From NCBI GenBank assembly GCA_038496445.1, contig JALMLS010000062.1, positions 674,870 to 738,869 of the forward strand: a DNA stretch of 64,000 nt, read 5' to 3'. Numbering within the stretch: position 1 is the stretch's first letter; each line of letters opens with the position of its first letter. Shown here piece after piece: positions 20,902-23,900 of the stretch. Source of the stretch: Trichosphaerium sp. ATCC 40318. Its lineage: Eukaryota > Protista > Tubulinea. A program made the position numbers and the translations under genes. The notes beneath the pieces are model-generated. The model was not told the origin of the DNA, did no database searches, and saw only the letters and a list, made by a program, of their open reading frames with translations.

Positions 20902-23900
20902 TTAATGTATAGATGCATCTAGATTGGCAAGGTGATCACCAATCTTTGTTGCAAGTTCTTGCACGTGAGGTTCAAAAACAATGGAATAATGGTCGGAATC
21001 AGTGTCGATAACATTAACGACAGAACAAAATTGATCCCAACCAAGTGTAGTGGAGTCTAATAGAGGATCCTTTAATCCCTAAATGGCGATTATTACAATC
21101 GATAGAGGAAGAGTGAATGTGTACCTTTATAGAAGCTTTTTGTTTGCTGCGGAATAGGGTTACAGATCCTTTGTACAAGGACGAAGGGTTATATTTTCTT
21201 ACTAACAATTCGCCGTCTAAAATATCTTTTTGAAATCTAAAGAAGAACGAGGCGCCGACAACAGGATCTATCTGTGATAACGCATCGGCTTCAATAGCCT
21301 TTTTGAATACATGTGCTAGCCGTTGATCAGGTCCTAACCCTTTCACGTCGCTAAAAAACCAGGTTACTATATGCTAACGCTAAGGGCTCACTTGAGCTTA
21401 CCTGTAATTAACTTCAAGCTCAAATCCTAAAAATTGCTTGGAGCCTGACATGACGATGAGCTTAATACAAGATAAATGGATTCATATTGATACCTTTGCA
21501 CAGTGTACACAATACTGCTGCGTCCAAATCCAAGTCCGCTTCTGCTGCTGCAGTGTATATAGGTGCTCTACCATCCAGAAGCGCTAGCATATCGACCTGT
21601 ATTCCCGCTGCTTGCTAACCGATACTGTTAGGATAAATGCATCACTTGATGTAGTCCGTACGAGTTGTCGTGCCATCTCATAGGCTACTGTTGAGCCAAA
21701 CGACCAACCGCCAATCTAAAGCCGTCAATACATAAAGATCAAGTGTTGTAGTACCCTGTATGGTCCTGATTTTTGTACTTCTTTAATGGCCTTGATGTAG
21801 TCACTTGCCATGTCCTCGATAGAAGTATAATCCCTCCTGAATTTGGTATTTAGCAACTATGTGGCATTTGAATGGCTAATGTACTAACCTTGGTTCCAGA
21901 CCATAAAATGGTTGATCGCTACCAAGATGAAACGCCAAGGCACCAAAACAGATGGCTGTCTTGAAGGCAGGATGCACAAAAAACAAAGGTGGCTTCGAAC
22001 CGGTTTTCTAGAAAGCGTACAATATTAGCCACCAAGAAAGTGTTGACTTATTTTTGTTCGTACAACTAGTGGCACGAGTGGTGTTGTTCTAGGTGCACTG
22101 CTGCAAGAACACGAATCCTTTATATTACCGCTTTTAACGCCTGCACTTTCATCTACCATGCTTGCTAGCTTCTTGACAGTTGATGCCGAGAACACCGCAG
22201 AGAAAGGAAATCTGACACCAAACTTGGCCTCGATACTGCCCATTAGAGAAACGCCCATAAGCGAATTACCACCAAGTTCAAAGAAATCATCCTCTACACC
22301 TACTCGGCTCACCTGCAACACATCTATTTATTTGGATTAGATCAAAAATAACTTGAACTAAAAAAGTACCTTGGAATATTTGTGCTAGTGCAACTTCAGT
22401 GGCAGTTTGAGGCACCACGTAATCCTGTAGTCTCGTTTTTTCAGGCACAGGAAGCGCTTTTCTATCCACCTTACCATTCTGTGACACAGGCCATGTATCG
22501 AGTGTGACGTAGTATGATGGCACCATGTACATTGGCAAATACTTTTTCAAAAACAACTTCAAAATTGGTCCTACAATCAAGTTAGCAAGCAACTCTTTGA
22601 GGTGAACACTGATTAAAACTTGCCAATATTGGGTGAGTCTACATTCTTGTTGAGTATGAGGTAAGCTGCCAAGTACTTCTCTCCACCAGGTTGATCCGGT
22701 TCTCTTGCCATAACGATACATTCGTTAATTGCTTCGTGTTTATAGAGTACGTTTACAATCTCTTCGAGTTCTAAACTTAAATCAAAACAAAACTTGAAAA
22801 AGCGCACGTGATTTAATAAAAGTACCTATGCGGTATCCTCTAATCTTGACTTGGTGATCGACACGCCCTAAAAATTCCAAGCGACCATCTGCCATGTAGC
22901 GCAAGACGTCACCAACACGGAACATGCGTTGGTATTGACCTTTAAGCGATGGAAAAAACTTTGCATACGGGTTTTCAATGTACGACGCAGCTGCAACGAT
23001 TAGTTCTTACCAAAAAAAAAAAGGGTATCGAACTTACCAGTTTTTGCAGCATCAACATAGCCTAAACCCACTTCCACACCGCCAATATAGAGTTCACCAG
23101 GTACACCTCTTGGTACTAACTGTAAGTGATCATCTAGAAGCAAGAAATGTGTATTATCCACAACACCGCCTAGAAACAATGACATGAGTACTCTTTGGTG
23201 CAAAACAATGAGTTACCAACTGGAATAGATGACTTGTGCGTGTCGTCATCAACTATGCGCAAGGCACTTGCCCAAACAGTCGTCTCTGTCGGACCATAAA
23301 GATTCCACAATGACTTGCACTTTGGTAGGAGCTGAGCTGCCAAATGACATGTCATTGCTTCGCCTCCACACCATATATTCAAATTCTCTGCATCACCTTT
23401 CCACCCTGCTGCGAGCAGCATTCGCCACGTGGCTGGTGTGGCTTGTAGTATTGTGATTGGATTTACAATTCTGTTTTGTTCAAGCACGTCAAGCAGAGCA
23501 ATGCCATCACGTCTAACAGCAGTTGACACCATCATAATCGATGCGCCACAAGTCAGTGGTAGCAAAAGCTCCTAAGTGTGAATCAATATTTTGTACAAAA
23601 TATGTGGCTAAAATGCATAGTAAAGAGCCCTTACCAATTGTGCGATATCAAATGTAATAGCGCTGACACAGAGAACAATGTCATCTGAATTCATTCCTGG
23701 GCTTTTGCGAATAAATTGAAATTGGTTTACGACTGCTCTGTGACAGATACGCACTCCCTAGAGAGGATTGAGCTGCTGATCCTTATCACATAAACAAAAG
23801 TGAACGACCACGTACTTTTGGTTTTCCTGTAGATCCACTTGTAAAAATAATATACATGAGCTGTTCGGAATCTACAGGTTCTACAGGAACAACCTAAAGA

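What the first reader, a model, noticed from the sequence alone, without database searches (positions are those of the whole stretch)
23170..23700. A-domain specificity code reads D-I-L-Q-W-G-L-V-W-K, i.e. glycine-type
Seen: FDIAQL|[33 protein letters not shown] and NGK. Aligned by eye to GrsA positions, this gives DILQWGLVWK, which is 8/10 identical to the canonical Gly code DILQLGLIWK (established). Inference: with START, the product could be an O-glycyl sterol/lipid or an N-acylglycine. Fungi make ergosteryl-glycine by a tRNA-dependent route (ErgS), so this would be a convergent tRNA-independent route.
Basis: partly seen in the sequence, partly recalled or inferred. Interest (0 to 1): 0.75.

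Follow-up and report, generated by a model that had tools for sequence, protein, structure and literature searches.

The report
Glycine-type adenylation domain, amoeba START-NRPS
The flagged stretch is the substrate pocket of an expressed amoeba enzyme of the nonribosomal-peptide-synthetase type. Its ten pocket residues read DILQWGLVWK, the signature of glycine-loading domains, so the enzyme probably activates glycine; what it attaches the glycine to is untested.

Summary
All five motifs are present on the minus strand, and the key join FDIAQL|ELLLPL is a real GT-AG intron (23572-23634) that spliced public contigs from two runs skip. Read by motif anchors, the code is D-I-L-Q-W-G-L-V-W-K, with K from NGKVDR at 22470-22472, outside the given coordinates.

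The glycine-type reading is supported:
- The two best solved-structure matches of the core exon are both glycine-bound A domains (AB3403, 4ZXH/4ZXI; DhbF A1, 5U89).
- The 60 or so most similar bacterial A domains nearly all carry DILQxGxxWK, and one bacterial module has the identical code.
- A tree puts the amoeba domain inside the clade that holds all DILQ domains (SH-aLRT 100).
- A second, GC-rich amoeba-like relative keeps DILQWGMVWK.

The gene (26607-20902, 24 exons, 1,496 aa in my model) reads START, linker, C-terminal half of a condensation domain, A, carrier, thioesterase. All A, carrier and thioesterase motifs are intact. The condensation half that carries HHxxxDG is absent, so N-acylglycine made by that domain is unlikely.

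An O-glycyl lipid made by a tRNA-independent route is plausible but untested. The scan had already noted this gene's architecture on this same window (s1-406583).

The parts
20902..26607 (-). Whole gene: 24 exons, 23 short introns (39-88 bp), 4,491-nt CDS, 1,496-aa model. Domain order: START, linker, C-lobe remnant, A, T, TE.
   Evidence: ORF pieces and GT-AG chaining. Pfam on exon pieces. Fifteen of the 23 introns are skipped by spliced public contigs.
23635..23757 (-). A-domain exon holding the end of motif A3 and motif A4 (FDIAQL). Code positions 235 (D), 236 (I) and 239 (L).
23572..23634 (-). 63-bp GT-AG intron between FDIAQL and ELLLPL.
   Evidence: Donor GTAAGG and acceptor TAG. Joint 23570>23634 in contigs of runs X1 and X5.
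23217..23571 (-). A-domain core exon with code positions 278 (Q), 299 (W), 301 (G), 322 (L), 330 (V) and 331 (W), and motif A5 (NLYGPTE).
   Evidence: Pfam AMP-binding E 3e-15. Best PDB hits are 4ZXH/4ZXI (E 8e-26) and 5U89 (E 1e-13). Codon coordinates.
22470..22472 (-). Codon of K517, in motif A10 (NGKVDR, 22478-22461); the tenth code residue, outside the finding's coordinates.
22370..24404 (-). Whole adenylation domain (model residues about 601-1136, nine exons), with motifs A1-A10 all recognisable.
   Evidence: Pfam AMP-binding and AMP-binding_C on exon pieces. Motif list.
24463..25259 (-). C-terminal lobe of a condensation domain only (model residues about 350-600). The N-lobe and HHxxxDG are absent.
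   Evidence: Pfam Condensation hit, best stretch at profile positions 378-455 of 456. PDB 8HLK alignment to chain residues 241-476. All but one of 130 phmmer domain hits start at residue 340 or later (one in the 320-339 bin), about 52 aa after HHxxxDG of the bacterial hits. No such motif in any frame of 25100-27045.
25698..26607 (-). Probable START lipid-binding domain (model residues about 1-200, five exons).
   Evidence: Exon-level only. Pfam START E 0.008, below the gathering score. STARD10 (6SER) E 0.12 over the P.PL.NRD stretch. ESM feature search scores 0.97, with 17 of 20 hits being START clusters.
22064..22323 (-). Carrier (T/PCP) domain exon with the phosphopantetheine-attachment motif GGNSL (22285-22259).
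   Evidence: Pfam PP-binding E 9e-14.
20902..22007 (-). Thioesterase domain (seven exons, including the 42-bp exon 21402-21443), with GWSFG, LLDG and DSDH as the candidate Ser-Asp-His triad.
   Evidence: Pfam Thioesterase E 4.5e-6 on the GWSFG exon. Spliced contigs. Motifs.

Best explanation
The stretch encodes the substrate-binding core of the adenylation (A) domain of an expressed, intron-rich amoebozoan gene for a single-module NRPS-like enzyme (START, linker, C-lobe remnant, A, T, TE). The A domain is of bacterial type and belongs to the glycine-activating class. D235 and K517 hold the alpha-amino and carboxylate groups. Q278 and W331, with W299, fill the side-chain pocket, so only glycine should fit. 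Inferred mechanism: glycine plus ATP gives glycyl-AMP. The glycyl group then passes to the phosphopantetheine arm of the enzyme's own carrier domain, and from there to the thioesterase serine for off-loading. The half condensation domain has no catalytic histidine motif and most likely serves only as the structural platform of the A domain. The acceptor of the glycyl group is unknown. A hydroxyl or amine of a lipid held by the N-terminal START domain is the leading but untested candidate.
For: Code DILQWGLVWK read at verified splice junctions. The top two solved-structure matches of the core exon are 4ZXH/4ZXI AB3403 (E 8e-26) and 5U89 DhbF A1 (E 1e-13). Both are listed with substrate Gly, and in DhbF the pocket is occluded by W755 hydrogen-bonded to Q699, which by my alignment are positions 331 and 278 (PMC11253843). 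A published survey of 93 Gly domains finds the code varying at exactly positions 299, 322 and 330 (PMC12283262); the window differs from the canonical code only at 299 and 330. The best-scoring bacterial A domains (41-46% identity over about 350 aa) almost all carry DILQ[LMWF]G[LMV][IV]WK, and P0002 4800-5130 has the identical code. In a tree of 106 A domains the window and its relative L001 (SH-aLRT 100) lie inside a 72-row clade (SH-aLRT 100) that holds all 46 DILQ domains and excludes the Ser, Thr, Val, Leu and Gln types. L001, a 62% GC intron-split relative, is 69% identical and keeps DILQWGMVWK. Motifs A1-A10, GGNSL and GWSFG/D/H are intact. The gene is transcribed and spliced in four public runs. 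Of 13 differences between those contigs and the window, 11 are synonymous.
Against: There is no biochemical evidence. The code is a prediction rule trained mainly on bacterial domains. AB3403's natural product is unknown, and glycine is called a 'representative substrate' in its structure (PMC10510592). The glycine clade in the tree also holds variant codes (DMPQ.., DIVQ.., DIMF..) of unknown substrate, so clade membership alone does not fix specificity. W at position 299 is a minority variant (6 of 241 DILQ domains). The START assignment is exon-level and below Pfam's gathering score. Nothing links START to the off-loading step.
Confidence: 0.65

Rival explanations
1. The A domain activates a small substrate other than glycine (for example alanine, serine, beta-alanine or sarcosine), and the glycine-like code is misleading in this diverged eukaryotic copy.
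For: Identity to bacterial Gly domains is only 41-46%. The glycine clade contains variant codes of unknown substrate. W299 is unusual. IdnL7 shows that small-pocket A domains can accept Gly, Ala and Ser (PMC11253843).
Against: All seven positions that do not vary among published Gly codes (D235, I236, L239, Q278, G301, W331, K517) are present. The differences fall at the positions known to vary. W299 makes the pocket smaller, not larger. An identical code exists in bacteria beside other DILQ modules.
Confidence: 0.2
2. Glycine is activated, but START is a lipid sensor or membrane-targeting module rather than the holder of the acceptor. The product would then be a soluble glycine derivative, or glycine handed to another protein or a small-molecule acceptor.
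For: There is a precedent for START fused to a thioester-cleaving enzyme as an allosteric lipid sensor: Them1/ACOT11 (bioRxiv 10.1101/2020.02.18.954917, listed). START lies at the far end of the protein from the TE, separated by about 1,000 residues.
Against: No soluble product or partner gene is evident. A stand-alone A-T-TE that merely hydrolyses glycyl thioester would be futile.
Confidence: 0.35
3. The enzyme makes an N-acylglycine: the condensation region couples an acyl donor to glycyl-S-carrier, as lipo-initiation C domains do.
For: The order C-A-T-TE resembles termination modules such as AB3403, which receive an upstream acyl or peptidyl donor (PMC10510592).
Against: Homology to C domains begins about 52 residues after the place of HHxxxDG. 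No HHxxxDG-like motif exists in the model or in any minus-strand frame of 25100-27045. Pfam matches only the C-terminal part of the Condensation profile.
Confidence: 0.05
4. The gene is a decaying relic of a bacterial transfer and has no function.
For: The condensation domain is truncated.
Against: The 4,491-nt reading frame is open across 24 exons. All A, T and TE motifs are intact. Spliced transcripts occur in four runs. Eleven of 13 strain differences are synonymous. The pocket is conserved in a distant relative.
Confidence: 0.03

Closest known systems
AB3403 (ABBFA_003403) of Acinetobacter baumannii, PDB 4ZXH/4ZXI
   Same: It is the best solved-structure match of the pocket exon (E 8e-26, about half of the aligned residues identical by my count). 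It has the same C-A-T-TE domain order and a glycine-type pocket, and was crystallised with AMP and glycine.
   Different: AB3403 is bacterial, has a complete C domain with HHxxxDG and no START domain. The N-terminal A-domain exon is not especially close to AB3403 (44 bits, against 126 bits whole-sequence, about 61 bits per stretch, for LgrA). The likeness is therefore concentrated in the specificity region and is not evidence of direct descent.
Glycine-activating A domains of bacterial NRPS (code family DILQxGxxWK; for example DhbF A1, PDB 5U89)
   Same: All non-varying code positions match, including the Q278 and W331 equivalents that occlude the pocket. The window falls in the same clade in the tree.
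   Different: W at 299 is a minority variant. The host is eukaryotic and the gene has 23 introns. Identity to the nearest bacterial domains is 41-46%.
AlmE/AlmF/AlmG of Vibrio cholerae (glycine modification of lipid A)
   Same: An A-domain enzyme activates glycine and a carrier protein delivers it to a lipid, without tRNA (PMC11253843). This is the closest known precedent for the proposed chemistry.
   Different: It consists of three separate proteins with a dedicated membrane transferase, and has no START or TE. AlmE was not among the significant PDB hits of the core exon. Lipid glycylation by the amoeba enzyme is not shown.
ErgS / ErdS of fungi (ergosteryl-3beta-O-glycine and -aspartate synthases)
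   Same: These are eukaryotic enzymes that aminoacylate a sterol, ErgS with glycine (PMC8913301).
   Different: They depend on tRNA and use a DUF2156-type aminoacyl-tRNA transferase. They share no homology or chemistry with an A-T-TE enzyme.
Them1/ACOT11 (StarD14): acyl-CoA thioesterase fused to START
   Same: START is fused to an enzyme that acts on thioesters.
   Different: The thioesterases are of the hotdog fold, START is C-terminal and acts as an allosteric sensor, and there is no adenylation or carrier domain (abstract only).

Membership tests
NRPS adenylation domain (ANL superfamily, Pfam PF00501/PF13193) | Core motifs A1-A10, including [10 protein letters not shown] (A3), NxYGPTE (A5), GELxIGG (A6), GRxDxQVKIRGxRIE (A8) and NGKxDR (A10) | tested here: met
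   Pfam hits on five exon pieces. Motifs located in the model. A7 is FRVGDV, a variant of YxTGD that is kept in relative L001.
Glycine-specific A domains | Ten-residue code of the form D-I-L-Q-x-G-x-x-W-K, variable only at 299, 322 and 330 | tested here: met
   The code is DILQWGLVWK. The pattern is taken from PMC12283262 and from 241 DILQ domains in the comparator set.
Glycine-specific A domains | Groups with known or predicted Gly domains rather than with other specificities | tested here: met
   The two best PDB matches are both glycine-bound. The window lies inside the 72-row clade (SH-aLRT 100) that holds all DILQ domains. Caveat: the tree is a quick search and the comparator set was chosen by similarity to the query.
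Glycine-specific A domains | Preferential adenylation of glycine in vitro | not testable with these tools
   Needs an ATP-PPi exchange or hydroxamate assay.
NRPS condensation domain (PF00668) | Two-lobed fold with the catalytic HHxxxDG motif in the N-lobe | tested here: not met
   Only the C-terminal part of the profile and of 8HLK matches. Alignments to 130 bacterial C-domain stretches start at residue 340 or later in all but one case. No motif in any frame.
Peptidyl carrier protein (PF00550) | GGxS phosphopantetheine attachment serine | tested here: met
   PP-binding E 9e-14. FFELGGNSL at 22285-22259.
Type I thioesterase (PF00975) | GxSxG nucleophile with Asp and His of the triad | tested here: met
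   Thioesterase E 4.5e-6. GWSFG, LLDG and DSDH are present. Assignment of the Asp and His is by motif position only.
START domain (PF01852) | Significant match to the START profile, or a helix-grip fold with a lipid cavity | tested here: inconclusive
   Exon-level evidence only: Pfam E 0.008, below gathering; STARD10 E 0.12; ESM features 0.97 to START clusters. A whole-domain fold was not possible without joining exons.

The most novel reading that the evidence does not exclude
The enzyme is a self-contained, tRNA-independent lipid-glycylating machine of a eukaryote. START extracts a sterol or phospholipid from a membrane, and the thioesterase transfers carrier-bound glycine onto its hydroxyl or amine. 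START would stand in for the lost donor-side lobe of the condensation domain. This would be the first NRPS-type lipid aminoacylation in eukaryotes and a new domain logic for NRPS-like enzymes.
Probability: 0.25. Interest if true: 0.8.

Novelty: new variant of a known kind. Interest (0 to 1): 0.55.

Why it matters
The A-domain reading itself is an ordinary, correct annotation: a glycine-type pocket of a well-known class. Its value lies in turning an odd eukaryotic gene into a testable hypothesis with a defined mass shift (+57.02 Da), a defined label (isotopic glycine) and a defined in-vitro assay. The gene is odd because it fuses START to a single NRPS module, has lost the catalytic half of its condensation domain, and is still expressed and conserved in at least two amoeba lineages. 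If the acceptor is a lipid, it would add a second, mechanistically unrelated route to steryl or lipid amino-acid esters in eukaryotes, beside the tRNA-dependent ErdS/ErgS enzymes. It would also show how a bacterial NRPS module was rebuilt after transfer into an amoeba. I found no paper describing a START-NRPS fusion, but the library is limited.

Tried and rejected
1. The big representative search with the core exon gave 15,978 hits. Its top 150 were all multi-module bacterial synthetases ranked by summed scores, so single-module orthologues could not surface. I reused the hits as a comparator set instead.
2. The word search with the core exon gave one close relative (P0151, 75% identity), on contigs of 2.5 kb and 0.5 kb only. 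Whether that relative has START is unknown.
3. The word search with the C-lobe exon found nothing at E <= 1e-5. Given the length filter, this says nothing about full-length kin.
4. The metagenome scan returned 80 loci of at most 58% identity. None approached the identity of the amoeba relative P0151 (75%). The two I looked at lie in long uninterrupted reading frames; the best (L004) sits in an A-T-KS-AT-ACP-C-T-TE hybrid. The viral scan found nothing.
5. P0187/L003 turned out to be a frameshifted bacterial nanopore contig.
6. The original AB3403 paper (PMC4843164, doi 10.1038/nature16163) is not held. Its substrate data are cited only through reviews.
7. Text searches for the code strings found one paper and no table with DILQWG.
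8. The PDB search with a TE exon found nothing. One PDB call and two locus calls failed on a frame slip of mine; the two locus calls were corrected and resent, the PDB call on the carrier exon was not.
9. The START C-terminal splice (25938>25851) remains my least certain junction. It does not touch the A domain.

Full report
**What is there.** The window is eukaryotic (about 41% GC, many short introns). On the minus strand, ORF pieces from 26607 down to 20902 chain through GT-AG introns of 39-88 bp, plus one GC-AG intron, into a 4,491-nt open frame of 1,496 codons.

Pfam scans of the exon pieces give, in order:
- START: weak, E 0.008.
- Condensation: C-terminal part of the profile only.
- AMP-binding: five pieces, best E 2e-27.
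- AMP-binding_C.
- PP-binding: E 9e-14.
- Thioesterase: E 4.5e-6.

**Expression and splicing.** Contigs of four public runs laid on 20902-26607 skip 15 of my 23 predicted introns exactly. They also revealed a 42-bp exon (21402-21443) that I had missed. Contigs that lack introns must come from RNA, so the gene is transcribed and spliced as modelled. The join that matters for the finding is 23570>23634 (63 bp, CT..AC on the plus strand, which is GT..AG on the minus strand). It is seen in X1 and X5, which belong to two studies. Of the 13 differences between those contigs and the window, 11 are synonymous.

**The observation.** FDIAQL ends an exon at 23635, and ELLLPL opens the next exon at 23571. 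I used the standard anchors:
- 235, 236 and 239 are read from the FD of motif A4.
- 278 is the residue before A-T-P in ILQATP.
- 299 and 301 are read as x-C-G before GE.
- 322 is the residue between N and YGPTE.
- 330 and 331 follow TETT.
- 517 is the K of NGKVDR.

The GrsA numbering of these anchors is from my own knowledge of Stachelhaus et al. 1999. With them the code is D-I-L-Q-W-G-L-V-W-K. The tenth residue lies at 22470-22472, outside the coordinates given. As a control on the column mapping, the same columns read from 421 bacterial A domains aligned to the model reproduce codes I know as textbook codes for Ser, Thr, Val, Leu, Gln and Asn.

**Is it glycine-type?**
- The core exon's best solved-structure matches are AB3403 (4ZXH/4ZXI, E 8e-26) and DhbF A1 (5U89, E 1e-13). 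A 2024 review lists both with substrate Gly. It describes the DhbF pocket as occluded by W755 hydrogen-bonded to Q699 (PMC11253843). By my alignment these correspond to code positions 331 and 278, and both are present here.
- A 2025 survey of 93 Gly domains reports that their codes differ at positions 299, 322 and 330 only (PMC12283262). The window differs from DILQLGLIWK at 299 and 330.
- In the comparator set, the best-scoring domains (41-46% identity over about 350 residues) almost all read DILQ[LMWF]G[LMV][IV]WK. One module of a bacterial synthetase (P0002 4800-5130) has exactly DILQWGLVWK. W at 299 occurs in 6 of 241 DILQ domains.
- A maximum-likelihood tree of 106 A domains places the window inside a 72-row clade (SH-aLRT 100). 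That clade contains all 46 DILQ domains and excludes the Ser, Thr, Val, Leu and Gln types.
- A 2.5-kb, 62% GC, intron-split contig from another sample (L001) encodes a relative that is 69% identical. It pairs with the window in the tree (SH-aLRT 100) and reads DILQWGMVWK. The pocket, including the unusual W299, is therefore conserved between two very different genomes.

Named neighbours of the comparator proteins are bacterial (Ktedonobacteria, Kofleriaceae). The 80 metagenome loci are at most 58% identical, well below the amoeba relative, and the two I inspected lie in long uninterrupted frames. This is a bacterial-type A domain living in an amoeba gene.

**Limits of that inference.**
- AB3403's natural substrate is not established (PMC10510592).
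- The glycine clade also holds code variants of unknown substrate (DMPQ.., DIVQ..).
- Identity to any bacterial domain is below 50%.

I put glycine at roughly 70-75%.

**The rest of the enzyme, and what it means for the product.** Homology to condensation domains begins abruptly at residue about 346-352 (FWQSQL). In the bacterial hits this point lies about 52 residues after HHxxxDG. All but one of the 130 matched stretches start at residue 340 or later. No HHxxxDG-like string exists in the model or in any minus-strand frame between 25100 and 27045. Only the C-terminal lobe survives, which is the lobe that packs against the A domain in solved modules (my inference from the structures reviewed in PMC10510592). 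Canonical condensation is therefore not expected, which weakens the N-acylglycine option.

The carrier (GGNSL) and thioesterase (GWSFG, LLDG, DSDH) motifs look intact. The thioesterase is thus the likely off-loading catalyst.

START is supported only at exon level: Pfam E 0.008; STARD10 E 0.12 over the P.PL.NRD stretch; ESM features 0.97, with 17 of 20 hits being START clusters. Whether START presents the acceptor or merely senses or targets lipids, as in Them1/ACOT11, cannot be decided here.

**Comparison with what is known.**
- A tRNA-independent, carrier-based glycylation of a lipid already exists in Vibrio cholerae, where AlmE activates Gly for lipid A modification (PMC11253843).
- I found no paper on a START-NRPS fusion or on amoebal NRPS genes of this kind.

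**What I left out.** Under the operators' rule, the spliced protein was joined only inside local scripts, read from window.fa. It was never typed or handed to a search or folding tool. As a result, three steps were not done: a whole-protein homologue search, a specificity predictor run, and a fold of the START domain or of the full enzyme.

**Verdict.**
- The glycine-type reading is well supported as a prediction.
- The glycyl-lipid idea is open (about 25%).
- N-acylglycine via the C domain is unlikely.

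Noticed in passing
window 22571-22623 (minus strand): A GC-AG intron (donor GCAAGT) among otherwise GT-AG introns. Spliced contigs of runs X2 and X5 skip it.
   Followed up: yes
window 21402-21443 (minus strand): A 42-bp micro-exon in the thioesterase region, found only through spliced public contigs and missed by ORF chaining.
   Followed up: yes
P0002 (bacterial, 5,244 aa) and other comparator proteins: Code variants DMPQ[LWI]G.VW, DLPQLGMVW and DIVQIGLTY nest inside the glycine-type A-domain clade. P0002 has three DMPQWGLVWK modules followed by two DILQWG.VWK modules. 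The substrate of these variants is unknown to me.
   Followed up: partly
window about 27046-27750 (minus strand): The neighbouring gene looks like a cyclophilin-type peptidyl-prolyl isomerase (PPIL1-like), split by an intron. Judged from ORF translations only.
   Followed up: no
window about 28105-28934 (minus strand): A RING-type zinc-finger start (C..C...C.H..C..C...CP.C) followed by a coiled-coil-like stretch; possibly an E3 ligase gene.
   Followed up: no
L001 (Logan SRR11047594 contig, 2,502 bp) and L002 (ENA ERZ778017, 516 bp): The same 62% GC, intron-split relative of the A domain turns up in two independent public assemblies. Its introns split the core exon more finely than in the window.
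   Followed up: partly
L003 (ENA contig_106830_np1212): A bacterial hybrid NRPS-PKS locus broken into many ORFs, most likely by long-read frameshift errors. Unrelated to the amoeba gene.
   Followed up: no
window 25187-25649 (minus strand), model residues about 222-345: A linker of about 125 residues between START and the C-lobe, with a weak UBQLN1/STI1-like Pfam hit (E 0.0098, below gathering). Function unknown.
   Followed up: no
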